From assembly GCA_964247055.1 (NCBI GenBank), contig OZ176052.1, forward strand, positions 4,092,001 to 4,156,000: a stretch of 64,000 nucleotides of DNA. The letters are read 5' to 3'. Every line of letters starts with the position of its first letter. Position 1 is the stretch's first letter. The DNA is from Paragordius varius. Lineage: Eukaryota > Animalia > Nematomorpha. This document shows positions 1,096 to 40,589 of this stretch, piece after piece. Made by a program: the position numbers and the translations under genes. The notes under the pieces were generated by a model. The model ran no database searches and had not been told where the DNA came from. It was given only the letters and a program-made list of their open reading frames with translations.

Positions 1096-2924
1096 ATGAG
1101 CACAAAAAGAGGTTGTAAATTCAGCGATGAATTAATGAAAGATTTTATCAAAAAAAACGAAGAATGAATCATCTGTTAAATGTCTTATATGCGAGGGGGA
1201 ATTCACTCTAGCACATGGTGGCAAGCATGATATTACCAAGCATGTGGAAACACAGAAACATATAAAATGTTTAGATATGGCGGCATCCTCTTACAAAATG
1301 AGCGATTTTTTTCGAAAAACCGCTTTTGGAGAGGAAGAAAAGAATTTGGCACTAGCTGAGGGCGTGTTATGTTTTCACGCAGTTAATCACAATCATTCCT
1401 TTCGATCTATGGACTGTATCTCACAGGTTATTCGCACGTTATTCCATAAAAAATTTACATGTGCCCGTACAAAGGCTGAAGCCATGTGCAATGTCCTTTC
1501 GCCACATGCATTTTCTGAAATACAAAAAGATTTGCTGAAAATTAAATTCTTATCCCTATACTCTGATGCATCAAATCACCATGAAACAAAATTATTTCCC
1601 ACTAAGATATTTTGATTCAGAAACCAAAGTAAAAATTAAAATTTTAGATTTAATTTCTCTACCCGGTGAAAATTTCGAAATAATATTTACTTCAGTAATG
1701 CATATTCTAGAAAAAAATAATTTAAAAGACAAAATTATCGCATATTGCGCTGACAACACAAATACGAACTTTAGTAGAAAAGTAAGGAGGGGAACAAAAA
1801 ATATTTTTCATAAATTAATAGATAATCTTAATCAAAACATTATTGGCGTTGGATGTGCAGCGCATATAATACACAACGCTATTCAAACAGCTGCTGATTT
1901 GTTACCCCTAGATGTGGAAAATGTAGCTGTTAAAATATATTCCTATTTTTATCTATAAACAGTACGTGTTGAAACGCTTAAAGAATTCTGTGAAAATGCA
2001 GAAGTTCAATATCAAAAAATGCTTGGATATTGTAAAACTCGTTGGTTAGCTTTTATGCCAGCTATCGAAAGAATTTTAAAAATGTATGATCCTTTAAAAT
2101 TATTTTTTTATCACAGGACAAATGTCCTACAACTTTAAAAAACTTTTTTGAAAGTGATTCTTTAAAAATATGGTTACAAGCTTTCTCTTTCAAAATGTTA
2201 TTAAATTTATAGAAGGTGACAAAATTTCGGGAATCGAAGTAGCCAATGAAGTTAGTAACCTAAAATTCCAATGTCAAGAACGGTTAAAAAATAATTTTAT
2301 TCCATTAACCATCCGCAATATAATAAATAATTTAGAAAAACAAGGCTTAATAAATAGCCAGATATCCTGTACCATATAAAAATGTTTTATACAAACTGTA
2401 AAGATTATTGGAAGACTGAACGACGCAATTCAATGAAATTGAGCATTTTCATTGGATAACAATAAAATCAGAATTTAATTGGTGCGATGTTCAAAAATCA
2501 TTTGATTATATCTGCTCCCAAAAATTCTCAAAAAGTGATCTTTCAGAAAATGATCTTTTTTCTGAAGTATCATAAGTTAAAAGATATATTAATAATTAAA
2601 AACTTTAATTATGGACAAAAGAAAAATATACAGTAGAAAAGAAATGGTTAGAAATATTTCATCATTTTGAAGCCAACTATATTACATACAATAATATTTT
2701 AAAAATTGTGGAATTTGCACTATCTTTACCTGGAACCAACGCTGCTACTAAGCGCGTTTTTTCCACAATAATCAGGTGTGGACATCGGAAAAATCAAATT
2801 TAAATGTTGAAACTTTAAAGGCCGTTTTATCTGTCAAATATAATTTGACAAATTCTTGTCAAGACTTTTACAATATTTTAATGATGACAATCTGCTAAAA
2901 CGCATTCACTCAAACAAAAAATAA
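1096..2924 (+). pseudogene. hAT-superfamily transposase, disrupted by frameshifts and stops
   Basis: ATG at 1096, then a BED-like zinc finger (KCLICEGEF..HGG.HD..KH), a DDE core (SDASNH, YCADNTN, GCAAHIIHN, TRWLA) and a C-terminal hAT dimerisation motif (LPGTNAA..RVFS...LNVETLKA). Track ORFs 1244-1615, 1566-1958 and 2170-2379 are pieces of it. Confidence 0.9.
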
Positions 2925-23687: not shown

Positions 23688-26600
23688 ATGGAAGAAATTG
23701 ACGAGCCCTTAAAATTAGGAATATTGTTAAATTTGGAAAATTTTATACGTAATGTCAATGAAAATAAATGTTTGATTTTTGTACATGTTACTTTAGATTG
23801 TTTTCCCACTTCGTTTACAAGTTTGGAAAGAAAATTTGTTCACCAATGTTGCCATCATTTAAAAATTTTGGCCAAAACCATCGGGTATTGAAATTTTTTA
23901 TATCATAAATATTATTTTTTTACATTTTTTTCTTTTATTAGGAAAGGAACAAATAAATACGTATTATGTGTTAAGGACCCAGATATTTTAGCGGTTGACG
24001 AAGCTTGTTCTTTTGCTCTCAATCCATCTACAATCAGCCAAATTGGTCATTTAGTCAACACATATCCCTTGACACATAAAGAGCGATGTGATTTATTGTT
24101 GCGTACGGAACGATTTGGAAACAATGTCACAGAAGGTTCATTATAACGCTTTATTACATTGTAATGTGTTTATAGAACAACTATTATTTTATAATAATTT
24201 TACTTTAAGGTATTTTTTGTGTAGTCATCGAATATTAGTGTTTTCTAAACGAAACATTAAAAATATGACCTATGAATTTGGTTAATATGTAAATAAAAAA
24301 GTATAATGTTCATGTATATTCTAAATTATTGTAACACTTTTGTAAAATAAAGTCAATACTCTTTTTTAACTAATTCCTTTTTTCATTCCTCATCTCACCT
24401 ATTGTTTTAACATTACATAGATGTTGAAAGAAATAAGATTGTAGGCCGCATTAACATAGGAATTCCACTTGTTCCTCACTGTGAACATATTGCAATTGAT
24501 GAAAATTTACCAATTTATGGCTTTCGAAAGGACATTCTTGAGATGATTAATAATTCTCCAATAACCATTGTGGATGGACCAATTAATTCTGGGAAGAGTA
24601 CGCAAGTATGATATCTTTAATAACGTTAATATTACCATAATATTAAAGTCTAAAAAGTCCAAAAATTAGGTTTTTAGGTTTTAAAAAAAGAAATCGCAGT
24701 TTTACAGCAGAAAATAATAGCTGAACTTAGTTATAGATTGTCAATTTCCATTTTATATATTATGTAACATATAATGCGGTATATAAAATTGTATAAATAT
24801 TATAACCGCAATAAGCCTAGTTTTTTATAATATAATTCTCTTTATTAAAGGAATATCTTACTTTTTTATGTAATTTTTTTATTTTTACTTAATTAATATG
24901 GATGTCAAAATATATATAATCACAAAATATAAATTTTTTGTCCGTTCTATTAGGTTCCACTTTATCTTTTGGAGTGGGCCAAGGTTAAAAAACAACCGAT
25001 TAAAATTATTTTTGTTCAAAATACCAAATTACAAGTCGTCAATTCAGCTGATTATTTGGCTCAGCTGTTGGGGGAAAAAGTTGGTCAAACCATTGGATAT
25101 CAGATTAGGTTGGAAAGCAAGTAACTAAATATTTTTTATTTCATTCATGATTTCAAATAATTTTTTTGGATATTTTTATCATATTTTAAACCTTTTTTAT
25201 GTAGTTAATATAATATTTTACTTAATATGTATGCAGTGTCGCTTTTAGAAATAATTTTTATGTGTTTTGATTTATTCTTTAAGTTAAATAAAATTAACTT
25301 TTAACAATTCTGACTAAATATATATTAGAGTGTCTCCCACATCTCTTCTTACCTTTTGTACGCCTTGGGTCTTTCTCCGAAACCTAATGACACAAGATGC
25401 CGAGTTGGCCAATTTAACCCATCTATTTTTGGTATCATCCCATTTTAAAATAAAATTCTATACATTTAAATTTAAATTTATGTGTTTTAAATATAAGCTA
25501 CATATTTTTTTTATTATATAAATAAATGAATAAATAGGATGATATGAATGAAAGATCTGCATCAATGGAACTTATACTTATGTATTTACGTCAATGTTGT
25601 AATTTTAATCACAGTTCATACATGAATTTGAAAAATATTAATAATGCTAATAACAATAATTCGAATAATGTTAAATTTATTTCGCCTTCCACATGCAAAC
25701 TTGTATTGCTATGTAATGATGATAGAAGTCATACAAAATCTGAACTTTATAATTATTTTATGGACTCATCAACTCTGAATGCAAATAAAGGCAATACTAC
25801 CACCTTTTGTAATTCAATATCAGGTAAAACTTTTAATTTAGGAATATCCATATTTATGTTTTGAAGGTAGTCCCTTCCTTTTGTAATTCTGATTTTTTTT
25901 CAATTTTTATGGATTTAATTGGAATAATCTGTAATATAATAAAGTGCAATAGACATGTTAATGATGTTTTAAGGATCATATTTGATAAAAATGTCCAATT
26001 TTTTCATTGTTATAAATATAACACTGTGCGCAAAAAAGGGGGATAAAAAATAAACAAACATGATTTTTATTTAGAATAATAAGAAATCTTTTGGAAAAGG
26101 AGACCCCAAAAGCTTTGGGGCAAAAATGCGCCCCAAAATGGATATATTCCATTTTTTCATTTTTGACTAGAAATATATTTTTGTCCATATTTTTAAAACT
26201 TATTGAGCAAACATGATAAAACTTTTATATATTATATAAAACCTCATATATTCTTAAGAAAAATACATAAAATTATTTTAAAGTATCAATAATTTTTTTA
26301 TTCCACAAAAACAGAAATTCGTAAATTTTATGACATTGTCAAAATATATTATAAAAAAATTATTTGTAAGAACTCCATATTGTTATTATTATTTAAGTTT
26401 ATGACTTATATATAACATACCAAAGAGTTGGTATATATAATAAAGGCTATGTATCTTTTTAAGTCCCTCAAAAAATTTTCGCGATTTTTGTTGCATTTTC
26501 CTCACATGCTTCTCTCTGTTTCATAAATACAGTATCAGTATGAGTAATCCGCAATTTTCAAAGAATACTGAAAAAAACAATAAAACTTCAAGATTATGAA

Positions 26601-29600
26601 ATTCCCATTACATTACTTTGGATAAATTTTTATATATTATTTAATCTATAGATAATAAATTTAATTAAAGACCTCTTGATATACAGAAAGCAGCATCGGA
26701 AATATAAATAGCTTTTTTTGCTATATACATTATATTTAGCGTTTTAAATAAAATTCTATTTGTATTCACGTATATTTTCTCTATATAATTTTAGTTACAA
26801 AATAGAATTTTTCTTGCACCAAAATTATTCTGACATTTGTAAATAATCCACTTCCAGAAACTCTATTACCAAATTAGAAATCTAACAATTTTTGCAATTA
26901 TATATATTGAAAAACTGATAATAAATGGATTTATTTTTATTCCATAGAATTTTTAGCATTTTTTTACAATAAGAATATTTAATTAGGTTTCAACAAAATT
27001 TTAAAATAACAATGTTCCGGTCTTATAAAAATATTGTCAATTACAAACTTCGTTTGCAAAAATTGCTCCTGCAACATCTCTTCAAGTCTAATTCTACAAC
27101 AACACCTAAAATACATATAAGAATTTAATTTATTATACATAATGAATATAATAGTCAAACATAAAGTGATTCCAATAGTATTCACCAACTATTGGAACTA
27201 GTATAGTTTTTTTCTATATGTTTGAGCGTTTGATGGAACCGTTCTTCATCCTGGTCTGTAGCCCTCTACCGGAATTAGTATAATTACCTTGCTGTGGGCT
27301 CATATTTCCTTGTAATGAACTAATTTCTCAGCAAAATACATGTTGTAATAGGTAATTATTTGTTCAGTTATTTTAATCAAATTTGTAGGGCGATGATACC
27401 TTCCACATATATAGCAGAAAAGGTCTTTATTCAATTTGCAATTAAATTTATTATCTATAGATTAAATAGTATATAAACATTTATCCAAAGAAATGTAATG
27501 GGAATTTCATAATCTTGAAGTTTTTTTGGTTTTTTCAGTATTCGCATTTGAAAATTGTGGATTTATGTATTTATGAAACAGTGAGAAGCATGTGAGGAAA
27601 ATGCAACAAAAATCGCGAAAATTTTTTGAGGGACTTAAAAAGATACATAGCCTTTATTATATATACCAACTCTTTGGCATGTTATATATAAGTCATAAAC
27701 TTAAATAATAATAACAATATGGAGTTCTTACAAATATTTTTTTTATAATATATTTTGACAATGTCATAAAATTTACGAATTTCTATTTTTGTGGAATAAA
27801 AAAATTATTGATACTTTAAAATAATTTTATGTATTTTTCTTAAGAATATATAAGGTTTTATATAATATATAAAAGTTTTATCATGTTTGCTCAATAAGTT
27901 TAAAAAATATGGACAAAAATCTATTTCTAGTCAAAAATGAAAAAATGGAATATTTCCATTTTGGGGCGCATTTTTGCCCCAAAATTTTTGGGGTCTCCTT
28001 TTCCAAGGGATTTCTTATTATTCTAGTTAAAAATCATGTTTATTTTTTTGTGCGCACTGTGTAATAGGAAACATTATTTTTTAAAGTATTAATGTTTTTT
28101 TTATTAATCAAGTTATATGCCTTGGAATAGTAAAATAGCTTTGATCAATTCACAAAATATTAAATAGCAAACGTTTGATATTTTATCCACAAATATACAA
28201 TGCTCAAGAAAGTTACACCCTATATTTTTTATTCAGATTTAAAATAAATATTTCATCGGTCCATGTTTTTGATACTTTGTTTCATACTAATATATTTTTT
28301 GATTAGATTTTAGATTAAAGTTATCAATATTTATACCTGTTTTTTTAATATACAGTTATCATGCCTACTAACGATGCAAAGGAACCGCATATAGAAAATT
28401 TTTACCTGGAAGATATTTTGGAGATGTAAACATTTTTTTGATAGTCTTTATTAATATAAGTTAATTTTTTTAAAATATTATCATTAACCAATATAATTAT
28501 TACAATTGCATTTTTTAGAATCAATTATAGTTATGAAAACGAGCCTAGAGTGGACAAAACATCTTTTGATATGTCCTATGCAAAACAATTTTTTGAAACC
28601 ATAACAGCTATATTGTATCAAACGAAGCCTACATCAACGCAAGATTACAATGCGCAATTATTGAAAATTAAACAAACAGAATTTCAGACCCTATTTTCTG
28701 CCCTTCCTACCAATATAACCAATAACTGTCCGGAAAAGTCATCAAATACAATGGATTTACAGCGTTACCTTAGTAATGTAAGTCATATATTTTTTTTCTA
28801 TACACCCCAATGGCGCCCTTTTTAACATTAGAATAGTCATATTTTATAATTATTTTATAAAAGTTACTCCATTGAAAAAGATACTACCATTTTATCAAAA
28901 ATTTTGGATATAGTTTTATTTGATAAATTTTACGAGCTTTTCTCATTTTTGCTAGGGTGGTAATTATTCATTTTTAATTGTTTAATTGAGTTGACTATAC
29001 CTTTTCTGTAAACCCACTAATTTGTGGGATATTTGGAGCTCCTTTATAATTAACCATCAAAATCATATTTTTTAAAATATATCAAACCATTTTATTTAAA
29101 TAGTAATGAAAAAAAAACAACTGAAGGTTAATTAACTTAATTAAAAAGGGTCTTGATGCTGGTATTAAGCCATGTATTATTTTCGCCTATAATTGGGGTG
29201 AATAATAGTGCATGTTTAATCAATATAAATAAATATTTTGGCTTTTATATAGGAACCTTATATGAATACTCTAATGGAGACTATTTGGATATTGGACGTA
29301 CTAACGTTATCTTTAAACGAAAATAAAAAACTTGACACTGAAATCAACCAAAATAAACCTTATGAGACACCAAATACGTATTTGGGTCTTGTCGTAACAT
29401 TTTTTCTGAAATCAATCGGTTCTTCGGGTATTAGAAATTTTCTATAAACTAAAATTCTTAAATGTTGCATTTTATTTAGCTTAGTAATATATACAGAGAT
29501 GAAATTTTTTAATTGTAAATTTTATTTTGTTTTCACTATTAAAAAAATAAACAACTTAATTATAATCAAAAATTATGTTATTCAAAAACTTGGGCCTTGT

Positions 29601-30534
29601 GCTATTACAAAAATAAAATTAATTATTCTCTGACTGTTTTCTTAATATTTTTTCATGTTTACCCCTGGATATATTTTTATTATTTTTTTATTAATTAGTA
29701 TTAATGCTACGGAATACAAGGTTGGACATTAATTTTTTCATGATGGCAGCTTGGTTAGGCAATATATCAGTTCTCAAAGATTTGTTTGATACCTCAATGC
29801 GCCAAACTTATGATAAGTTTGATTATAGTCAAAATTCTATTCCAGCCGAAAATAAAGGTATATATTACCAATTTTGGTATATTTTAGCATTTTTTTTAAA
29901 TTTTTTTATAATATATTAAAATTTAAGTACAACTACATTATTTGATTAAAATCACAACTAACTCATTTAGGTCTATTCAATTTAAAGGGACACCCCAACT
30001 AAAAATAATAATTTAATTAAAGCTTATGAGCATGGTTAGTATTAAAATTATTTTGGTGAAAGTATAAGCGTCAAATTTGAAGATTTTGAAGTAAAATTTA
30101 TGTAATACACCATGTAATTTGTTATGCAATACATAAGACTTTGGATTGTTAAGGATAATAAATAAACTTTATTACAACTTCGGAATGAAAACTAATTCAA
30201 AAACGAATAAATTTTTTTTTACATAAAACAGCAAAGATCGTGCAATAAACCATTAAACCACAATATGGTATATTATTTGAATTACCTGAGAAATATTGGT
30301 TGCTTTCAAAAGACATTTCTCATTTTTATTTTTTTTCAGCCTAATTGCTCTATCATCAAAAAATTGCAAAAATATTTTTAAAATTCAAAAATTGGTACCT
30401 AGAGAGTCAACAAGTGAACTCAATTCTATGTTATTGAATAATGAACATATATTGTTTATAAGAATTAATGCATATTGAAAATGTGTTTTTTTTATCGTTT
30501 TAAATAAATTTCACTGCTTAGTTATATACTCTAA

Positions 30535-30565
<31 letters not shown>

Positions 30566-33500
30566 ACAGGTTATGGACATGTTAACACATTACTTAACGC
30601 TTTCTCCAAGCACAAGGGATGGATTGCATTAGATTGGGCATTTTATTCACCAATTAATTCGAGTTTTGGCAATTCTAACCTGGACGCACAAATATTGAAT
30701 GATTCTTTCAATAAAATTAATCTTGTTGATTCTTCCAATCATTCTGCAAAAGATAATGTTAATTCATCTGAAGTCCAAAATTACTTTGGATCTACATACA
30801 ATAGTGCCGCCTATGACCTAATTCAAACATTTTAGTATACATTTATTGGTGTTTAATAAATTAGTTAGTTTTTACAATATTTTGAAAAATATTCATAATG
30901 TAATTTGAAGGATTTTACATATCTTTATGTATAAAATCTGATTCTTTGACAAAATGCATTAAACATATTTTTGAAATCTCAATTAGTTTATTCTTTTTCT
31001 AAAAGTTATTAAAATATTTTTGGGTGAGCATTAATGCTTGGTATATCCATTTCTCTTCAATGTTTTTAAAATAGAATTTCATGATAATAATTTTTTTTGC
31101 ATTCATTACTCTTTCTAGCGAACTAACCTCCTTACAACCGTTTGAAGAAGCTAAATTATATTTATTGCAAACAAACCAAAATTTATCAACATCACCCAAA
31201 ACAGTCGATAAACTTTTAAACTTTTATCATTCCTTATATGACACGAATACGAATAATAATAATAATACGGTTGAAAATGCAGTAATATATACATTGAAAC
31301 AACTCTTGTTAAATATATGTACCCAATATACCAAAGAACAAAGAATGGATAAAAATTATGAAGCAACATTAGCCTTTAACATACTATGTATTATGCCACT
31401 TGTGGATGATTTATTGACTGTAAGAAAAAGTGTGATAAATTTTTTGACCGAATATATCTCTGTACACATGAACAATCAGAACGAAAATGTTGAGACACTA
31501 AAGTAAAAAATATAATTATATTAGTAATAGAATAATTTATATTTACTGTTTTCAGTAAAGTTTAACCATTCGTTTATATTTTTAATATTTTTGTTGCCGT
31601 TTGTTTTTAAGGTTTAAAACTTTTATGCTGTTTCGTGATATGCATCCACAAGATTTGAAACCTATATACCATTCCCTGTTAGATCAACACTCTCAATCGA
31701 AACAAGTTAACATTGTAAGTTTTTACCGTCCATCATTTTTATTTAAAAAATTGTAAAAGTTAATGTGGATATAATTGGTTTTTATACCTAAATTCACCAA
31801 GAAATATATTATTCCAATGGTATTAATATCTTAATTCCTATCAAAAATTAATGATTTTTATTTTTACCTATAAATAAGTCTTTTACTATTTGTTTATATT
31901 ACGAGATGGATTTTTTCCGATTTTTTTGAGTCATTTTTTAGGCTAGCCATCCTGGTAAAATCATTTAATACTTAAATAAATGTAAACTATTCTTTTATTA
32001 TCAGATATTTGCCACGGAGATTGTTGAGAATTACATTCCATTACCAAATATACATAGCATCATAGATTTCGGATTAATTTATCAGGTAAAAAGTAATTAT
32101 CTAATTTTATTATTAAATGGTATAAAAATAAATAACTTATTTTATATCCCCCTAAAATTTATAGGAATATTACAAACTGGATCAAAATGCAAGCACACTA
32201 AAACAGGGATTGATTAGTTCTCAAAATTTGGCTAATAGACAAAACATGTAATTTATATACACATTTTGATAATATAATATATTAAATACTTTGGAACCTC
32301 AATTTATGAAAAACATTTTTGCATAAAAATCTAAATTTTTTTATAGAAACTGTATTTTTTACACTTAGCCTTAAAACATGGATATCTTTACCCGGTCATG
32401 GGGAAAATATCAGTAGATGTTATTACGCATTTTACTCAAAATCAAGATACGATCTAATTTGTCGCACAGATGAGGCGAATGATATTCATATATCGAATTA
32501 TCCAATCATCCCACAATACCCTAGTATTTGGTATATAATTTTAAACATTATACAGTAAAAATTAATATTTTAAAAACATTAAAAACCAAAAAAAAAATTT
32601 TTCAAATAAACGACATTATTTGATTTTTTACATTATTGTGAAATCGATAATTAAGTGTGGTATTGATCTATATATCCATTCCATATTTGCAACCTAAATA
32701 AGATACATATATAAAAATATGGTTTAAAAAATATTTATTTTCAGTTTTACGTTTGTCTTTATAATTTCAATTTTTTTTGTATTTCCCTAAATGTATATCA
32801 TCTATTAAATTATACATTATATAGTCCTGATTTGCAACCCAAAATAAATAATATAGTATGCATAAATATATGATTGTTCATTATTTTTATTTTCAATTTT
32901 AATGTTTTGTCTTATAATTTCAATTTTTACTGTAATTTCCTAGTTATATATTCTATATAAATTTTTACATTATATACATATAGTCAATATAATTCATATG
33001 TGTTTGGTGATATTTCCAACATAATATTAACGGCAAAAATGTTACTAAATAACACAAATTCTACGCTCAATACTTCAACTCCGTACCCGTCTGGTTTATC
33101 TCTCAGTGATTTTTTGCAAAAAATCCCTTGCGATTTGACTCATTCAAACCATGTACGAAACAAAATTAGCCCTGTCACTACCAAGGAAGAAATTAAAAAG
33201 GAAAAATCCAAGTCTGAAGAAAATACGTATGCACAATATCTGGCTAAAAAGATTAGAACTCTTATACAAAACTTAAAAGTAATGATTGATAATTTATTAT
33301 AAATATAAACTATGGGTATTCGAAGGATTCATAAATTTTAAGAGGTCAATGGTATTGTAAAAGGCTTTTTTATATATATATTAATTATAAAATTTTTACT
33401 TAAACAATTTTTACAAGCAACATTGATTACCCAAAACTTTAAGTTTAAATATTTTATTGCTTTAAAAATATATTGCAAAAAACTGTTTTTCATTGTAAAT

Positions 33501-36500
33501 TATCAATATATATATTTATATAATATTATGAAATTTATGCAATGATATTAACCTTAAAGTTCGTATTTTAATTTAATTACCATTCACTGATTAATTATGC
33601 TCTGAGAATATTTTTTGCTTAAAATGTATTTTTAATGTGAATAAGGAATTTATTTCTATAAATAGAATATAGATGTACTGGATGATTGTGGTGATATAAC
33701 TGAATGTGGTCAACATTCACTTGATATACCCTTGAATCCGGTCTGGTCTCGCCTCATAATTCATGGACTTGTTTTCAAGTGTCTTGATCCAATACTTACT
33801 ATAGTTTCTATGCTAGTTACATGTTTGCCCTTCAATAACACAGGCTTACCTTACTTGCCCGCAAATAGCATACTTAATTATCACATTAAAAAAAAATGTT
33901 TTCAAAATGAACATTATGTTGTTAATATTCCAAAAATTGATAAGTCTGACTTAAATAATGTGTTCGGAGGGAGTAATCGAAGAAACAGTTTTGAAAAAAT
34001 GGGAGTGTCCGTTGATAATAGGTAAACATTACATATATGATTAGAAATTTATACTTAATTTTTCGATTGGTTTTATTAATATTTTAAACAAAAATTTATC
34101 TACATGTATTGGCATATAAAATGTGTTAATTAATTGGATTTTCCTTATTAATTTATTTAAAAAGTATAAAAGTTTTTTATACACACATTTATATTTTTAC
34201 GTGTAAACTTCCTAATTAATTTAAATAATCCCTCTCTCTATATACATATATATATGTATATATATATATCATATATATGTAAATGGTAATATATTTAAAT
34301 TAATAACCCAAATCATTATTGAATAAATATTGAGTTTATATTGATATCGTTATGTAGATTGAGCATAAACGGTTCACATCAAATTCGTATAGACAAAGGG
34401 AGCATGAGTGATCATTTGTTAGCCATACGAATATTTCAGGTTCTAATTTTTCCATATGTAGGCAATTTCTATATATATATATATATTAAACTATAAGATA
34501 TGGTTTATATGAGAGAATGAAATTTTTTCAAATCTGGTTTAGAAATGCATTTATGACCCTAACTCAGACCACAGATAACATAACCATCCAAAAACTTTTA
34601 CATGATAAAATTAAGATAAATAAATGGCATAAAATCTAAATATGGGAAATAATTATGAATTTGTATCGAATTTGCATTTAAATTTTATTTATCAATATAG
34701 CAACTAACCCGATTTAAGGTGGTTAACTTTTTTTGTTTTGTTTAGTAACAACGAACTATAATCTACATTTGTTATAATTTGTTTATGATTACAAATCACA
34801 GCATTCATAAACAGTTGGGCCGATAATATATATCACTTGGAAACAAACTTTCAATTTTAAATAGGGAATCCAAATTTAAGGAATATTATAGTTTACAAAA
34901 TAGCCATATTTTTTGGTACCATAAGACTTTTTATGAAAATGCATAAAAATTGAAAATATGCGGAAACCTTTGTGTCGTAAAAAAATATTATTATGTTAAA
35001 AGGCGTGGCAAAAAGCCAGATTAGATGGGACAGAATCTAGTTTTTGTCATCGATACAACCTTTCGAGCCATTTGTTGGAATCGGCCTACACTTTAAGATC
35101 ACATCTTTTGGGTCAACTTCGTGCGTCTGGCTTAGTTAGATCTTCATCTTGCACCGCATCTAATGTCGTTAATAATAATGGATCATCTACCAATAACCAT
35201 AATAATGTAGTGTTGTCACCTAACAATATTAATATTATGAATTCAGCTCAAAATGTCGGCTCAAATGCCATCAGTGGAAATGGGATAGAATCTTTTGGAG
35301 ATATTAGGTATGTTTTTTTTTCATTTATTTTTAAAACTATTTGGAATTTGGAATGGTTCATCCATACATTTTAAAATTATGAAAATACTTTTTTAGACCA
35401 GTAAATTATGGGTGTTATTGGTTAGCAATAATTAAAAATAATTATTTTAATTGTTATTTATCTATTTATCTTTTATTTATGCTACTAAATCAATTTATTG
35501 GTTATATATATATATATATATATATATAATTCTGGCAGAATTCGTTTATTATACTCCTTTTACCCACCTAGTATCGATTCTATACAATTATATTAAGATA
35601 TTTACAAATATGATTGGTAATCAAGATCTCTTTATTAGTTTATGAGATTCAAATTTTTTGTATATCCGGTTTTTTTGGTAATATAATTACAGTAAAATTA
35701 AAATTATGCGGACAAAACGTAAAATAAGAAAAATATTTTTTTCTAAAAGACAACCATACTTTTTAAAACCTTATTGTTTTCCATATAAGCTTCATAGTTA
35801 ATTGTAAAATATAGAATTGATTGTGTTAGTTATATATATCTCTATTTCACCCTTTGTCATTTAAAACAATTAGTCCTATTGAAATAAATCAAGATTTAAA
35901 AAGTATGGTTGTCTTTTAAAAAATATTTTTCTTTATATTTTCACGTTTTGTCCATATAATTTCAGTTTTTTCTGTAAATGATTTTTTTCCACTTTTTAGA
36001 GACTGTAACAATAACTCTGAAAGTTGGCCAATGGTTAAAGCGTGTTTAACCATCGCACTTTATCCCAACATTGTAAAAATGATACCGGATTCATCAAATG
36101 ACGGTAATTTATCCAATTTATTTGATAAATATATGGGAATATATTATCGTAAAATTAATTTATATTAACCGTTTTATGGAAATATGTATGTTTTTATTTA
36201 CAGTTCAAATTCACCCTTGAACAATTTAAATTAACCCTAAAAATAAATTATATATTTTCGAACTAATATAAATCATTATTCATATGAAATATATGTTTAT
36301 AGCATAGTTTATTTGTTGAGAATGTATGAAAATATAGGTAATTTTTAATCTTAAAAATTATAACTTATTTTAGGGTGAATTATTGTTCGAGGCTGAATTT
36401 GAATTGTTCAAGGGTGAATTGAATTGTAAATGGTATATTAAAATTAATGTATTATGTATATTATGGATTTATCGAAATAATTAAACTTAAGATATATATT

Positions 36501-37313
36501 TAAAAAACTGTCTTATAATAATTTCATGCCTTTTACATAATTTTAATGAATATACGTTTCTTTTGTAATGTTAACAGATCCGGCAAATAAATGTCAATTT
36601 TCCCAATCATCCTATGTTTTTGAAAGCTCATACTACAATAAATACTTGTGTTCTCCATCACATACATATTTGCCGTTTGAAGTTACTTTAAAGACTACCG
36701 CTGACAATAACAAATTGGCCTTTTATAATCCCACATTTATCATACCTAAAATCCATGAAATACCCGCGCAAAATTCATCCCATTCATACAAAGTACAGTT
36801 GAACCCAACATCTATTCTGCCGAATGGTGGTGACACCAAAATTTCGCATAAAAATGGTGAAAATCATCCGCTTTGGTTAATTTTTACACGTTTTTGTGGC
36901 CCAACGAAATATTACTTAGCAGCAACGTCTATAGATGATAAAAGTTTATCGCCAAATGTGCATTCGTTTAACTTGAAAAACAAAAATATCCTGAGTTTCA
37001 TTTCCCAATGTACTCTTATTAATCCACTTACCATCATTTTGTTTGGAGGACCAGGGAAAACACCGAAAGATTTTATCCAAGACATTGAAAATCCAGACAG
37101 TGAGTTTTTTAAAGTCAAAAATTTACAGTTATTTTCAAAATTAAAAGCTACCCGAGTTTTAATTTTCTTTTTTTTATAATAAATAAGTATATAATTTTCT
37201 TTATAATTATCAAAAAATCTAATACAAATAACAAAATATTTTACCAAATTATGGATACTCTTTCTAACAAATATTCATTACAATTGTTGGTTTAAATATT
37301 TAATATACATTTT

Positions 37314-37351
<38 letters not shown>

Positions 37352-40300
37352 GGTCTTCAGAATATGGCAAGTCTTGTGTTACAGGAAGAAAGTGATAGCG
37401 AAAGCGAAACATTTTACGAAAATACTTCTTTCAGCCAAAACGTTAGGTATATTATATTTATAATATTTGACTTCACTATATTCTTGTAATACTTTCCGGT
37501 CTTCTATGAATAATATTGTTTAATTATTTATTAAAAATGCTATTTTTGTTATCAACGAACTAGGAATCATAAAAAGCGGGCTTCATTGGGCGATTGGATT
37601 GAATTAAAGTTAGATGAACGCTTATTACTTACCCAACAATCGGACCTGATTCGACAATGTTTGGCTTTAAGGCAAAAATATCAATCCTTTATATTACGGA
37701 GACTTCGACAACCATCTAAAGCCTGGACTCATGCAGATGATGTAATAACTAAATTTTTTGTGTATTTAAACCAAGTCTTCATATTCGTTTTTTTTTAAAC
37801 GGCGCCTATAAACTAAAAACGAAGATGTGTAAATTTGGCAATTTGAATTTGTTTTAACGTTTTTCGTTTAATAGGTTTAAACCTAGTAAAAAATAACACA
37901 AATATTGAATTAAAACTGGTATGAAAAACATTAGTTCTTTTTTGTTTATTTTATGCTGTTCTTTCTTTATATAATTATCTAGAAATATCTTTTTTTCTTT
38001 GTCAAAAGTTCTGCTGTTATAATATTTTTCGGATAGTAATGATTTAGGTTTTAAGGTATAATCACATTTGCCACAAATTTAATAATTATCAGCATGATCC
38101 AATTAGTTAATACACCCTGTTTTGGTAAAAATTCTCGGTATTAGGGTGGAGAGAAAGAACTATGAGTTTGATTTAAAAAAATATGTAAATTTGCTTAATA
38201 TTATTGCATTAACTTCTATTTTATCAAGTTTTTGCCATATATTAAATTTACAATAATTGAAAGACATATAATTTTGAATGATTACCCACACCCATTTTTA
38301 TAGGTGCTTATATATCAAAAGTAATTTCTGTTTAATTTACACTCAAAAGGTTTTATTGCGAAGCCTGGTTCAAATGTTAGAACAAGAAGATATTCAAGCA
38401 GGCATTACCCCACAACCTTCTGGGATTGGGTTGAGGCCAAAACCGCTTCCTATCGAATATTACAATGAAGTCGAATCTAATGATGCGTATCACCAAAAAC
38501 AAAATATCAATTATAATTTTGTTGCGCAAGATACTGTTTATAACCAAAGTATTTTATATCAACATTCTAGAGTCGTTAGGCAAAACTTTTAAATTTGTTT
38601 CAATTCTTTGTATATTTCAAACAATTTTTTGCATAGATATAGGATATAATCCAAGTTAGTTGAACATCTTATATAATAATAGATAATCGTTCTTGGTTAA
38701 CAGAAACCTTATATAATATATTTTTTATTTTTTCAATTATTGGTTACATTTGTTTAATTTCTTTGTTTGCTTCTTTATATTATTGACACTTTCAATATGT
38801 TGGAGTTTTTTTCACAGGAAATGATTTCGCCAGAAATATTGGCTTATTTATCATTCGATAGTTCCGTACCCATGGTTTTCATATATAACAATTGTTTTTT
38901 AAGCAATCAATTTTAAATCTTATTTATTATGAATTAAGGAAAGAGTTCAGGGGACATAAATACACAACTCCCCTCACAGTTTGTGAAATTGCCTCCTTTG
39001 AAAAAACTTAAATTTGGACTCATAAAATTGGAGATGCAAAACAATTTTACCATCAACAACACTAATAATAATAATTATAACAATATGATAATTGCTCCAA
39101 ATTTAATAGGGAAAGATTTAACATTTGAGTCCACCGCCGTATGTCCCACTAATACCAATCTTGTTATGTTGGCAAATTCTAAGCCACCGAAATTGGGTAT
39201 GATGAATAAATTAATACATTTTACATATTAGAATTTTAGAGACAAAATGTCTAAAAACAAAATTTTTTATGAAAAATAACCATACTACTGTTTCATAATT
39301 TTTCTATATCCAAATCATTTCTACAACTGTGCAATGTATAATTGAGTGTATTACCTATATAAATCACTATTTATTTCGAAACCCATAACGATAGGTGATA
39401 AAAATAGGGGTATATAAATATGGTTTTTTTATATAAAAAATATTAGTCACGTTTTGTCTTTATTAATTTTACTGTAATTTATTTGAATTGAAGAAATATT
39501 TTTGAGTTCTGCTGCATAGTATCAATAAAATATCGTTATATTTATTTAGGTAACCCAGATGATTTTTGCAATTATCCTGCCGTTGAAAAGGATATATTGG
39601 CCATTATTGCTAAAAATGTATGCATATGCTTTACTTTTAAATGTTACCTACTTTAAATATTTAACATATACATCCATTGAAATATTATTGCCAACTATTT
39701 ATTAATTTTTTTTATATAATTTTATTGTTTATTAGACCACAAATCTAATTAGCCATTATCATCAAAGTAATGTGAATAAGAGTGGGCATAATAACAGCGG
39801 AATAGAAAATGAAAATTGTTTAAACCTGCTTTTGTTCGTTTATAAATCGAAAACACGCATTTTTGTCGGAATATTTCACGTAGCTATACATTGGAAAGAG
39901 GCCCTTCAAAATTTAAACACTGAATCTAAGAAGCCCCAGATAACATCACAGCATGATTGGATGATAAAGTTTTTTTCTGGCATATAAATTTTTTTGTACA
40001 AATGGTCGTTATTTCAGAATAATTTATGAGCAAATAAAATACGGTAAAATTTTAAGTTTTTCGAAAAAAAACATGATTTTAAAAAAGTTATTAAGTCATA
40101 TAAAATTTTCCATTTTATGCTTATATATATATCATAGTTTTCGCCTTATCCAAAATCTTATTTTAATTTTAATTTAATCAGATATTGTGGTAAAGAGATC
40201 CACATTTAAAAGTTTAAAAATTTTATTGACAATTTTTTAAAATAAAAAAAATGCAATTGTTTAACTTAACAATTATATTTTTAAATAATTGCATTTAGAA

Positions 40301-40589
40301 AAATAGCTAATTTGATTCATATTCAATCCAACTGTGTACCTGAGTTCAACACCTATTTGACTAATATTTTGACAAACCCTGCTTCCTACATGGTATTCCT
40401 ATATTTTAAATCATATAGAGATTTAAGTACATATTAAATTTATTTAAAGACATTAAAAATTTTAATTATGACATTTAAAAAATATTATATTTTTATTTTT
40501 CACATGTAAAATAGGATATGGAACCGGATAAAGCTGCATATCTGTTTAAATATTTTGACAATCCATCCAAAATATCCTTTTTACAATGA
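23688..40589 (+). CDS. YTHDC2: YTHDC2-like protein (R3H, DExH-like, ankyrin, helicase C, HA2, OB fold, degenerate YTH), over 20 exons
   Basis: Motifs match the family as recalled: FPTSFTSLERKFVH (R3H); YPLTHKERCDLL; GRINIGIP; GEKVGQTIGYQIRLESKVSPTSLLTFCT; KGWIALDWA (ankyrin); VFKCLDPILTI (HA2); AWQKARLDG; LLGQLRASGLVR; NSESWPMVKA...LYPN; LRQKYQSFILRRLRQPSKAW; QPSGIGLRPKP; terminal DMEPDKAAYLF with TGA at 40587-40589. Confidence 0.92.
26022..28061 (-). mobile_element. 2,040-bp DNA transposon with ~650-bp inverted arms and a decayed transposase N-terminus, in a YTHDC2 intron (25824 to ~28355)
   Basis: Arms 26022-26674 and 27421-28061 are reverse complements, with termini CAC(T/A)GTGCGCA next to TA. 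The minus-strand core reads CKLNKDLFCYICG...*AH/AP...VPIVGE..WNH..DY, a decayed form of the FCYICG/WAPH/VWREP.NH..DCYFC motif set of a widespread invertebrate transposon protein. Confidence 0.85.
35690..35974. mobile_element. 285-bp hairpin MITE with TA target duplication (YTHDC2 intron)
   Basis: TA|CAGTAAAATT..GGACAAAACGT..AAAAGACAACCATACTTTT ... AAAAGTATGGTTGTCTTTT..ACGTTTTGTCC..TTTCTG|TA. Confidence 0.75.
36201..36426. mobile_element. 226-bp MITE with TA target duplication (YTHDC2 intron)
   Basis: TA|CAGTTCAAATTCACCCTTGAACAATT ... AATTGTTCAAGGGTGAATTGAATTG|TA. Confidence 0.8.

What the first reader, a model, noticed from the sequence alone, without database searches (positions are those of the whole stretch)
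24576..32460. YTHDC2 ortholog looks like a pseudo-helicase
Domain order and linker motifs are clearly YTHDC2, yet the catalytic motifs are altered in correctly spliced exons. Motif I is GPINSGKS (lysine kept). Motif Ia QPRR is QNTK. Motif II DExH is DDMN (25538-25549), losing the catalytic Glu and the His. Motif III SAx is replaced by CND. Motif V reads ATEIVENYI. Motif VI QRxGRAGR reads NRQNILKT, losing the arginine fingers. The ORF is otherwise intact over 17 kb, so this is not a pseudogene. Drosophila Bgcn is a known catalytically degenerate YTHDC2 ortholog, so this may be an independent, convergent loss toward an RNA-binding scaffold.
Basis: partly seen in the sequence, partly recalled or inferred. 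Interest (0 to 1): 0.7.

Follow-up and report, generated by a model that had tools for sequence, protein, structure and literature searches.

The report
Hairworm YTHDC2 with a dead motor
A horsehair-worm-like animal keeps an intact, selected copy of the germline RNA helicase YTHDC2 in which nearly every residue needed to burn ATP and unwind RNA has been replaced. A second hairworm genus shares the same replacements, so this is a second natural "motor-less" YTHDC2 besides the fly protein Bgcn.

Summary
A 29-exon GT-AG gene (23688-40437, + strand, 1889 codons, no stop) belongs to the YTHDC2 family.

Against 12 canonical YTHDC2 proteins from Cnidaria to fish:
- Motifs Ia, Ib, II, III, IV, V and VI are replaced.
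- The P-loop G-x4-GK[ST] is kept.

The only close relative found among 1.84 billion proteins is "YTHDC2-like" of the hairworm Gordionus. It carries the same derived states: QNT[KR], TPWVFL, DD[MI]N, xRxNI[VL]K. The loss therefore predates the split of two hairworm lineages and has been maintained since.

Published work reports that nematodes keep intact motifs I and II. The loss is thus independent of fly Bgcn.

Not settled:
- I could not check whether an intact second copy exists elsewhere in the genome.
- The conserved C-terminal domain could not be shown to be a decayed YTH domain.

The scan has not noted this YTHDC2 gene on other DNA. Unchecked scan notes report DHX9 genes with "dead motors" elsewhere in this same genome.

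The parts
23688..40437 (+). Whole gene: 29-exon YTHDC2-family coding region, ATG to stop, 1889 codons.
   Evidence: GT-AG junction solver guided by Gordionus P0055. The C-termini of both proteins coincide. Some junctions in poorly conserved parts are uncertain: exon 6 donor 25808 or 25823, the end of exon 9, exons 18/19, and exon 23 donor 37446 or 37485.
23688..24135 (+). Exons 1-2: R3H domain, with the R-x3-H motif SLERKFVH at 23820-23843.
   Evidence: Pfam R3H is weak on the single exon (E=0.026). The Gordionus ortholog scores 44.3 bits against a cut-off of 26.8. Alignment.
24576..24599 (+). Motif I (P-loop): GPINSGKS. G-x4-GK[ST] is kept; the canonical form is GETGSGKT.
   Evidence: Gordionus has APIASGKT.
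25017..25028 (+). Motif Ia: QNTK in place of QPRR.
   Evidence: Gordionus has QNTR.
25360..25377 (+). Motif Ib: TPWVFL in place of TNGVLL.
   Evidence: Identical in Gordionus.
25538..25549 (+). Motif II (Walker B): DDMN in place of DE[IV]H. The 'ketu' His four residues upstream is kept.
   Evidence: Gordionus has DDIN. The exon gives no helicase hit in PDB.
25706..25723 (+). Motif III position: LLCNDD. SAT is lost.
   Evidence: Gordionus has LLNTGP.
29699..30834 (+). Exons 10-11: remnant of the ankyrin-repeat insert between RecA1 and RecA2 (...MMAAWLGN..., ...KGWIALDWA...).
   Evidence: Aligns to the ARD of canonical YTHDC2 and to Gordionus ...NGWTALHWAKHF.... Pfam detects no ANK repeat.
31381..31404 (+). 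Motif IV: ILCIMPLV in place of LIFLPGY.
32011..32034 (+). Motif V: ATEIVENY in place of TNIAETS.
   Evidence: Gordionus is less eroded (STEIGET).
32234..32378 (+). Motif VI: NRQN|I|LKT, split by the 121-nt intron 32248-32368, in place of QRxGRAGR. Only the first Arg is left.
   Evidence: Gordionus has YRKNIVKR.
33666..35307 (+). Exons 18-20: winged-helix/HA2 ratchet region, among the better conserved parts (for example LVFKCLDPILTIV and LLGQLRASG).
   Evidence: Pfam HA2_C E=7.8e-6. PDB DEAH helicases match. Identity to Gordionus in WH+HA2 is 47%.
36000..37099 (+). Exons 21-22: OB-fold region.
   Evidence: Pfam OB_NTP_bind is below threshold at 13-18 bits. This piece retrieved the Gordionus protein.
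39550..40437 (+). Exons 27-29: hairworm-conserved C-terminal domain at the place of the YTH domain. Its identity as a YTH domain is not shown.
   Evidence: tblastn against Gordionus. hhalign probability 0.1% against YTH. AF2 and Foldseek are inconclusive.

Best explanation
This is a real gene under selection: the YTHDC2-family gene of a horsehair worm (Nematomorpha) or a close relative.

**What is kept.** The architecture is retained: R3H, RecA1, an ankyrin-type insert, RecA2, winged-helix/HA2 ratchet, OB fold and a C-terminal domain. The P-loop lysine and the Mg-binding Asp are also kept.

**What is lost.**
- The catalytic Glu and the His of DExH.
- Motif III, which couples ATP use to unwinding.
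- The RNA-backbone contacts of motifs Ia, Ib, IV and V.
- Two of the three arginines of motif VI.

**When it happened.** The replacements arose before two hairworm lineages split and have been conserved since.

**Inferred mechanism.** The protein may still bind a nucleotide. It cannot hydrolyse ATP at a useful rate or translocate along RNA. It would act as a non-enzymatic RNA-binding adaptor: R3H and the HA2/OB side hold RNA, and the insert and other surfaces recruit partners. It would carry out the ATPase-independent part of the ancestral YTHDC2 germline function, as Bgcn does in flies.

**Shown versus inferred.** Gene structure, family membership, motif states, sharing with Gordionus and the open reading frame are shown. 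Loss of activity, nucleotide binding and the scaffold role are inferred.
For: **Gene structure.** All 28 junctions are in-phase GT-AG. There are 0 stops in 1889 codons, against 6-11% per codon off-frame. Exon GC is 33% against 21% for introns.

**Family.** The tree places the protein inside the YTHDC2 clade. R3H and HA2 are detected. All top hits are YTHDC2.

**Motif states.** In 10 of the 12 canonical YTHDC2 proteins, all the motifs are essentially invariant. In the window and in Gordionus P0055 they are replaced by shared derived residues.

**Pfam.** DEAD and Helicase_C fall below their cut-offs in Gordionus (14.5/26 and 18.5/23.5 bits) but pass in Limulus. The motif II exon finds no helicase in PDB.

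**Constraint pattern.** RecA2 identity is only 29% between the two hairworms, against 62-67% between phyla for canonical proteins. RecA1 (51%) and WH+HA2 (47%) stay more conserved.

**No alternative exon.** No exon with canonical motifs exists anywhere in the 64 kb.

**Literature.**
- Nematodes keep motifs I and II, and Bgcn is a Schizophora-only paralog with dead motifs (PMC5832417).

**Established SF2 helicase knowledge (Fairman-Williams et al. 2010).** The Walker B Glu is the catalytic base, and the motif VI arginines contact the gamma-phosphate.
Against:
- No transcript-derived protein fragments were found.
- There is no biochemical test. Asp at the catalytic position and an intact P-loop leave room for residual or regulated ATPase activity.
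- dN/dS could not be computed, because the Gordionus coding DNA was not retrievable.
- Several exon junctions in poorly conserved parts are uncertain.
- The window's species is inferred only from its nearest relative and its base composition.
Confidence: 0.8

Rival explanations
1. The gene is a Bgcn-like paralog rather than the ortholog. An old duplication in the hairworm lineage produced this degenerate copy, and an intact, active YTHDC2 still sits elsewhere in the genome. The motor is dead in either case; only the evolutionary reading changes.
For: This is what happened in schizophoran flies (PMC5832417). The stem branch is very long, at 1.77 changes per site. Scan notes report a second, degenerate DHX9 copy in this same genome (unchecked). 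My searches were too insensitive to exclude a second copy: the HA2 word search returned only ten canonical YTHDC2 proteins out of the many that must exist.
Against: No second Gordionus YTHDC2-like protein appeared in either full-length word search. No other YTHDC2 note exists among the scan's roughly 4,700 notes on this genome. Unlike Bgcn, the protein keeps R3H and the P-loop. All of this evidence is weak.
Confidence: 0.3
2. The protein is still an active but atypical ATPase or helicase that uses DDxN and a reduced motif VI.
For: G-x4-GK[ST], the Walker B Asp and the first Arg of motif VI are kept in both species. Gordionus also keeps the last Arg and a near-canonical motif V.
Against: Seven of the eight motifs are altered at once, including the catalytic Glu, SAT and TQPRR. 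RecA2 is the fastest-evolving helicase domain. The E-to-Q change alone abolished activity in human YTHDC2, as cited in PMC8887132. To my knowledge no active SF2 helicase with DDxN is known.
Confidence: 0.07
3. The locus is a decaying or unexpressed relic, or the model is an annotation artefact.
For: No expression data could be obtained. Divergence from canonical YTHDC2 is very high.
Against: An open frame of 1889 codons in a 25% GC genome, where random frames stop about every 12 codons, is incompatible with decay. The same architecture and the same derived motifs are kept in a second genus at 42% overall identity. The start and stop positions coincide in both.
Confidence: 0.04

Closest known systems
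Canonical metazoan YTHDC2 (3'-5' RNA helicase, partner of MEIOC)
   Same: It has the same domain order: R3H, DExH-type core with an insert between the RecA domains, WH/HA2, OB and a C-terminal domain. It nests inside the YTHDC2 clade. The 'ketu' His upstream of motif II is kept.
   Different: Motifs Ia, Ib, II, III, IV, V and VI are replaced. Pfam no longer recognises DEAD, Helicase_C, ANK or YTH in the Gordionus ortholog. Identity to canonical proteins is 23-41% in the RecA domains, where canonical proteins of different phyla share 62-70%.
Drosophila Bgcn and the schizophoran Bgcn subfamily
   Same: Both are YTHDC2-family members with ATPase motifs incompatible with hydrolysis, no detectable YTH domain and fast evolution. 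Both presumably act without helicase activity (PMC5832417, PMC8887132).
   Different: The lineage is a different phylum and the origin is independent. The protein here keeps a clear R3H domain and the P-loop GK[ST], whereas Bgcn lacks a clear R3H match and is altered in motif I. Bgcn is a paralog that arose by duplication, while no second copy is known here.
Nematode YTHDC2 homologs (for example C. elegans F52B5.3)
   Same: They come from a related ecdysozoan phylum, Nematoda. They have no detectable YTH domain and a divergent insert region (PMC5832417).
   Different: Nematode proteins are reported to keep the helicase core with intact motifs I and II. The hairworm proteins have lost motif II.
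Gordionus sp. m RMFG-2023 XP_065320928.1 '3'-5' RNA helicase YTHDC2-like isoform X1' (P0055)
   Same: It has the same architecture, the same derived motif states and the same C-terminus. It is the only close relative found.
   Different: Identity is only 42% over 1218 aligned columns. Gordionus is less eroded in motifs IV, V and VI.

Membership tests
YTHDC2 family | N-terminal R3H domain | tested here: met
   R-x3-H (SLERKFVH) at 23820-23843. Pfam R3H is weak on the single exon (E=0.026) but scores 44.3 bits against a cut-off of 26.8 in the Gordionus ortholog.
YTHDC2 family | Groups with YTHDC2 rather than DHX36, DHX9 or DHX57 in a tree | tested here: met
   The YTHDC2 clade has SH-aLRT 98, and window plus Gordionus has 100. 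The position within the clade, next to Schistosoma, is probably long-branch attraction.
YTHDC2 family | Ankyrin-repeat insert between the two RecA domains | tested here: inconclusive
   An insert of the right place and size aligns to the ARD and keeps GW[IT]AL[DH]WA. Pfam finds no ANK repeat.
YTHDC2 family | HA2 (ratchet) and OB-fold C-terminal extensions | tested here: met
   HA2_C has E=7.8e-6 on the window exon and 2e-6 in Gordionus. OB_NTP_bind is detected only below its cut-off, at 18-20 bits.
YTHDC2 family | C-terminal YTH domain (lost in several accepted members) | tested here: inconclusive
   There is no Pfam YTH hit. hhalign gives 0.1% probability and hmmsearch gives negative bits. 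AF2 with YTH sequences in the alignment gives pLDDT 68.6. The best Foldseek hits are THYN1 and YTHDF2 at E 0.1-0.4 and TM 0.35-0.47, which is circular and weak.
Active DEAH/RHA helicases | Walker B DExH with catalytic Glu | tested here: not met
   DDMN at 25538-25549, and DDIN in Gordionus.
Active DEAH/RHA helicases | Motif VI QRxGRxGR arginines | tested here: not met
   NRQNILKT here and YRKNIVKR in Gordionus.
Active DEAH/RHA helicases | Motifs Ia (TQPRR), Ib (TxGxLL), III (SAT) and V (TNIAETS) | tested here: not met
   VQNTK, TPWVFL, NDD and ATEIVEN. None of the canonical patterns occurs in any frame of the window.
Active DEAH/RHA helicases | P-loop G-x4-GK[ST] | tested here: met
   GPINSGKS here and APIASGKT in Gordionus.
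Active DEAH/RHA helicases | ATP hydrolysis and RNA unwinding | not testable with these tools
   This needs recombinant protein assays.
Bgcn subfamily | Descent from the YTHDC2 duplication in Schizophora | not tested
   Bgcn was not in my sequence set. According to PMC5832417 the subfamily is confined to schizophoran flies, whereas the nearest relative here is a nematomorph.
Bgcn subfamily | Loss of R3H and of motif I as well as motif II | tested here: not met
   R3H and GK[ST] are kept and only motif II is lost. The Bgcn states are taken from PMC5832417.

The most novel reading that the evidence does not exclude
The hairworm protein is the sole YTHDC2 of the phylum. It works as a nucleotide-binding but non-hydrolysing RNA clamp or adaptor, a natural counterpart of the mouse E332Q state with its RNA-tract motifs remodelled. 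It would also be part of a wider dismantling of DExH motors in Nematomorpha, since scan notes report dead DHX9 genes in the same genome. That would mean the ancestral germline role of YTHDC2 does not need unwinding, and that whole phyla can dispense with the activity that mice need in meiotic prophase.
Probability: 0.25. Interest if true: 0.7.

Novelty: new variant of a known kind. Interest (0 to 1): 0.5.

Why it matters
YTHDC2 is a deeply conserved regulator of the switch from mitosis to meiosis. Whether its helicase activity is central to that role is an active question.

In mice, the ATPase mutant still enters meiosis but fails later. Fly Bgcn, until now the only known natural motor-less relative, is a lineage-specific paralog.

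A second, independent motor-less YTHDC2 that keeps R3H, the P-loop and the HA2/OB module, conserved across hairworm genera, is a natural experiment. It shows which parts of the protein carry the non-catalytic function.

It also suggests that erosion of the helicase core recurs in this family. Partial erosion is visible in Schistosoma and in an oribatid mite.

I found no paper that mentions both YTHDC2 and Nematomorpha.

Tried and rejected
**Searches and look-ups that gave little or nothing**
A more conserved exon would have returned more family members.
- A word search with the Gordionus RecA1 part (residues 130-340), meant to catch transcript-derived fragments from other hairworms, gave nothing.
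- The look-up of encoding contigs for the Gordionus protein found no record, so no coding DNA and no dN/dS.
- Exact look-ups of two window ORFs found nothing, so this genome's proteins are not in the collection.

**C-terminal domain as a decayed YTH domain: not supported**
- hhalign and hmmsearch were negative.
- Single-sequence AF2 gave pLDDT 36.
- The ESM Atlas feature search returned OB-fold clusters with low shared-feature counts.
- AF2 with YTH rows in the alignment, followed by Foldseek, gave only weak and circular matches.

**Alternative splicing to restore motifs: rejected**
- The acceptor at 32347 runs into a stop or skips the motif VI position without restoring it.
- No canonical motif exists in any frame of the window.

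**Micro-introns of 21-27 nt**
- Earlier notes claim them nearby. None is needed in this gene, whose shortest intron is 57 nt.

**Handling of the joined model**
- The joined 29-exon protein model was built and aligned only inside scripts.
- It was not sent to any search or fold tool. Exons were searched singly by reference.
Full report
**What is in the sequence.**
The window has 25% GC and is clearly eukaryotic. On the + strand, stop-free pieces between 23.6 and 40.4 kb read as parts of a YTHDC2-type helicase. I read the DNA around each piece. A script then tried every GT donor and AG acceptor between neighbouring exon cores. It kept only in-frame, stop-free joins and scored them against the nearest relative.

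The result is a 29-exon model, 23688-40437, of 1889 codons with introns of 57-2547 nt. The junctions that carry the catalytic motifs are unambiguous. They are 24605|24954, 25120|25329, 25431|25538, 31714|32005, 32085|32165 and 32247|32369. Several junctions in poorly conserved stretches are less certain (exon 6 donor, end of exon 9, exons 18/19, exon 23 donor).

The frame has no stop in 1889 codons. The other frames of the same exons carry 6-11% stops per codon and the introns 7-8.5%. Exons have 33.4% GC and introns 21.3%. This is a maintained coding gene.

Every quoted motif is at the stated place:
- GPINSGKS at 24576-24599
- QNTK at 25017-25028
- DDMN at 25538-25549
- LLCNDD at 25706-25723
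- ATEIVENY at 32011-32034
- NRQN-I-LKT at 32234-32247 plus 32369-32378

I aligned the model locally with 12 canonical YTHDC2 proteins from Nematostella, Trichoplax, molluscs, chelicerates, insects, echinoderms and fish. The canonical motifs GETGSGKT, TQPRR, TNGVLL, DE[IV]HER, SA[AT], FLPGY, TNIAETS and QRxGRAGR are near-invariant in 10 of these 12 proteins. The Schistosoma and Oppia proteins are partly eroded. The window protein differs at all of them except the G-x4-GK[ST] skeleton of motif I.

A six-frame scan of all 64 kb finds no canonical DExH, GxGK[ST]T, QPRR, QRxGRxGR, TNIAET or TxGxLL. No hidden exon could restore them. The motif II exon finds no helicase in PDB. The HA2 exon does find DEAH helicases and passes Pfam HA2_C.

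**Relatives.**
The exhaustive search with the OB exon returned one true relative among 1.84 billion representatives. It is a RefSeq protein of the horsehair worm Gordionus sp. m RMFG-2023 (G. montsenyensis). Its full-length isoform is named '3'-5' RNA helicase YTHDC2-like isoform X1' (P0055, 1775 aa).

tblastn of that protein maps along the whole window gene, and both proteins end at the same point. The Gordionus genome has 26.9% GC (bioRxiv 10.1101/2023.06.26.546503), like the window. The window's own proteins are not in the collections. Identity to Gordionus is only 42%. The window therefore comes from a different, unannotated hairworm or close relative. Earlier scan follow-ups on other pieces of this genome reached the same taxon. 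I treat those notes as leads only.

**The degeneration is shared and therefore old and maintained.**

| Motif | Window | Gordionus |
|---|---|---|
| I | GPINSGKS | APIASGKT |
| Ia | VQNTK | IQNTR |
| Ib | TPWVFL | TPWVFL |
| II | DDMNER | DDINDR |
| VI | NRQNILKT | YRKNIVKR |

Each pair shares the same derived residues. These states were fixed before the two lineages split and have been conserved since. That argues for selection on a new, non-catalytic state rather than ongoing decay.

Pfam on Gordionus passes R3H and HA2_C. It fails DEAD (14.5/26 bits), Helicase_C (18.5/23.5) and OB (20.1/29.5), and sees no ANK or YTH. Limulus YTHDC2 passes all of these.

Domain by domain, the two hairworms share:
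- 51% in RecA1
- 47% in WH+HA2
- 52% in the HA2-OB link
- 29% in RecA2
- 26% in the insert

Canonical proteins of different phyla share 62-70% in RecA1, RecA2 and HA2. RecA2 carries motifs IV-VI and has lost the most constraint.

**Family placement.**
In a maximum-likelihood tree (LG+C20, quick search), the window and Gordionus proteins form a clade with SH-aLRT 100. The clade sits on a very long stem (1.77 changes per site) inside the YTHDC2 clade (SH-aLRT 98), with DHX36, MLE and DHX57-like proteins as outgroup. Their attachment next to Schistosoma joins long branches and should not be trusted.

**Comparison with what is known.**
Jain et al. 2018 (PMC5832417) surveyed YTHDC2 across Metazoa.
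- Bgcn is a paralog confined to schizophoran flies. [quoted passage not shown] - Nematomorpha is not mentioned in the paper.

No paper in the library holds both 'YTHDC2' and 'Nematomorpha'. The hairworm case is therefore independent of Bgcn and apparently undescribed. It differs from Bgcn in keeping R3H and the P-loop.

Saito et al. 2022 (PMC8887132) showed that mouse YTHDC2 E332Q still supports meiotic entry but blocks later prophase. [quoted passage not shown] The authors draw the parallel with Bgcn. That gives a plausible role for a motor-less YTHDC2.

**Mechanism (inferred).**
With Asp for the catalytic Glu, no SAT, no TQPRR or TxGxLL, and one (window) or two (Gordionus) of the three motif VI arginines left, ATP hydrolysis coupled to 3'-5' translocation should be lost. 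This rests on established SF2 helicase knowledge. The conserved GK[ST], the Walker B Asp and the 'ketu' His leave nucleotide binding possible.

The constrained parts are R3H, RecA1 with its remodelled motif Ib, the WH/HA2 region and the link to the OB fold. They fit an RNA-binding adaptor that recruits partners.

I put about 0.8 on 'real, selected, catalytically dead YTHDC2-family protein'. I put about 0.6-0.7 on it being the only YTHDC2 homolog in hairworms.

**What could not be done.**
- The Gordionus coding DNA was not retrievable, so dN/dS was not computed.
- A second, intact YTHDC2 elsewhere in the genome cannot be excluded. Neither full-length word search listed another Gordionus protein, and the scan's notes on this genome mention YTHDC2 only in this window. 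Both checks are insensitive.
- The joined exon model was used only inside scripts and was not sent to any search or fold tool. Exons were searched singly by reference.

**The C-terminal domain.**
Exons 27-29 encode a domain conserved with Gordionus at the place of the YTH domain. The evidence for calling it a YTH domain is weak:
- Sequence methods give no support: hhalign 0.1% probability and hmmsearch negative bits.
- Single-sequence AF2 failed with pLDDT 36.
- AF2 with YTH rows in the alignment gave pLDDT 68.6.
- Foldseek then listed THYN1/EVE and YTHDF2 folds at E 0.1-0.4 and TM 0.35-0.47. This is circular and not significant.

I leave it as 'YTH not detectable; a decayed YTH is possible'.

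**Verdict.**
Three corrections apply. Bgcn is a paralog. The loss is lineage-wide in at least two hairworm genera rather than private to this genome. Orthology and function remain untested. This is a new variant of a known kind, a second and independent motor-less YTHDC2, of moderate interest.

Noticed in passing
window 26048-28049 (inside the 2.5-kb intron 6): A foldback-type element of about 2 kb with 484-nt terminal inverted repeats that are 97% complementary, plus a second inner inverted pair of about 104-124 nt. There is no long ORF inside and no other copy in the window.
   Followed up: partly
P0025 (Schistosoma japonicum) and P0021 (Oppia nitens): Two other annotated YTHDC2-like proteins have partly eroded motifs. 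Schistosoma has TQPYR, DEIEEE and QRQTRTGA. The Oppia mite has AEPRS, DEIQES, SSD and HRRNRANR. Erosion of the YTHDC2 motor may recur in several lineages.
   Followed up: no
P0003 versus P0055 (Gordionus isoforms X2 and X1): RefSeq isoform X2 starts inside the motif Ia exon and lacks R3H and the P-loop. If real, hairworms also make an N-terminally truncated form.
   Followed up: no
window 35140-35290 (exon 20): An Asn/Ser-rich low-complexity stretch lies between the HA2 region and the OB fold. Gordionus has one at the same position. Further Asn runs lie at about 25630-25670 and 31240-31270.
   Followed up: no
whole gene 23688-40437 versus notes s1-379495 and s1-379364: Earlier notes claim 21-27 nt micro-introns in neighbouring genes of this window. 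None of the 28 introns of the YTHDC2 gene is shorter than 57 nt.
   Followed up: partly
same genome, other pieces (scan notes s1-326605, s1-257468): Scan follow-ups report DHX9/MLE genes in this genome that also keep ATP-holding residues but have lost catalytic ones. Together with this gene, that hints at a genome-wide tendency to dismantle DExH motors. I did not check these notes.
   Followed up: no
window 1244-1958 (+): Two overlapping ORFs of 123 and 130 aa look by eye like pieces of a transposase-type gene. I ran no search on them.
   Followed up: no
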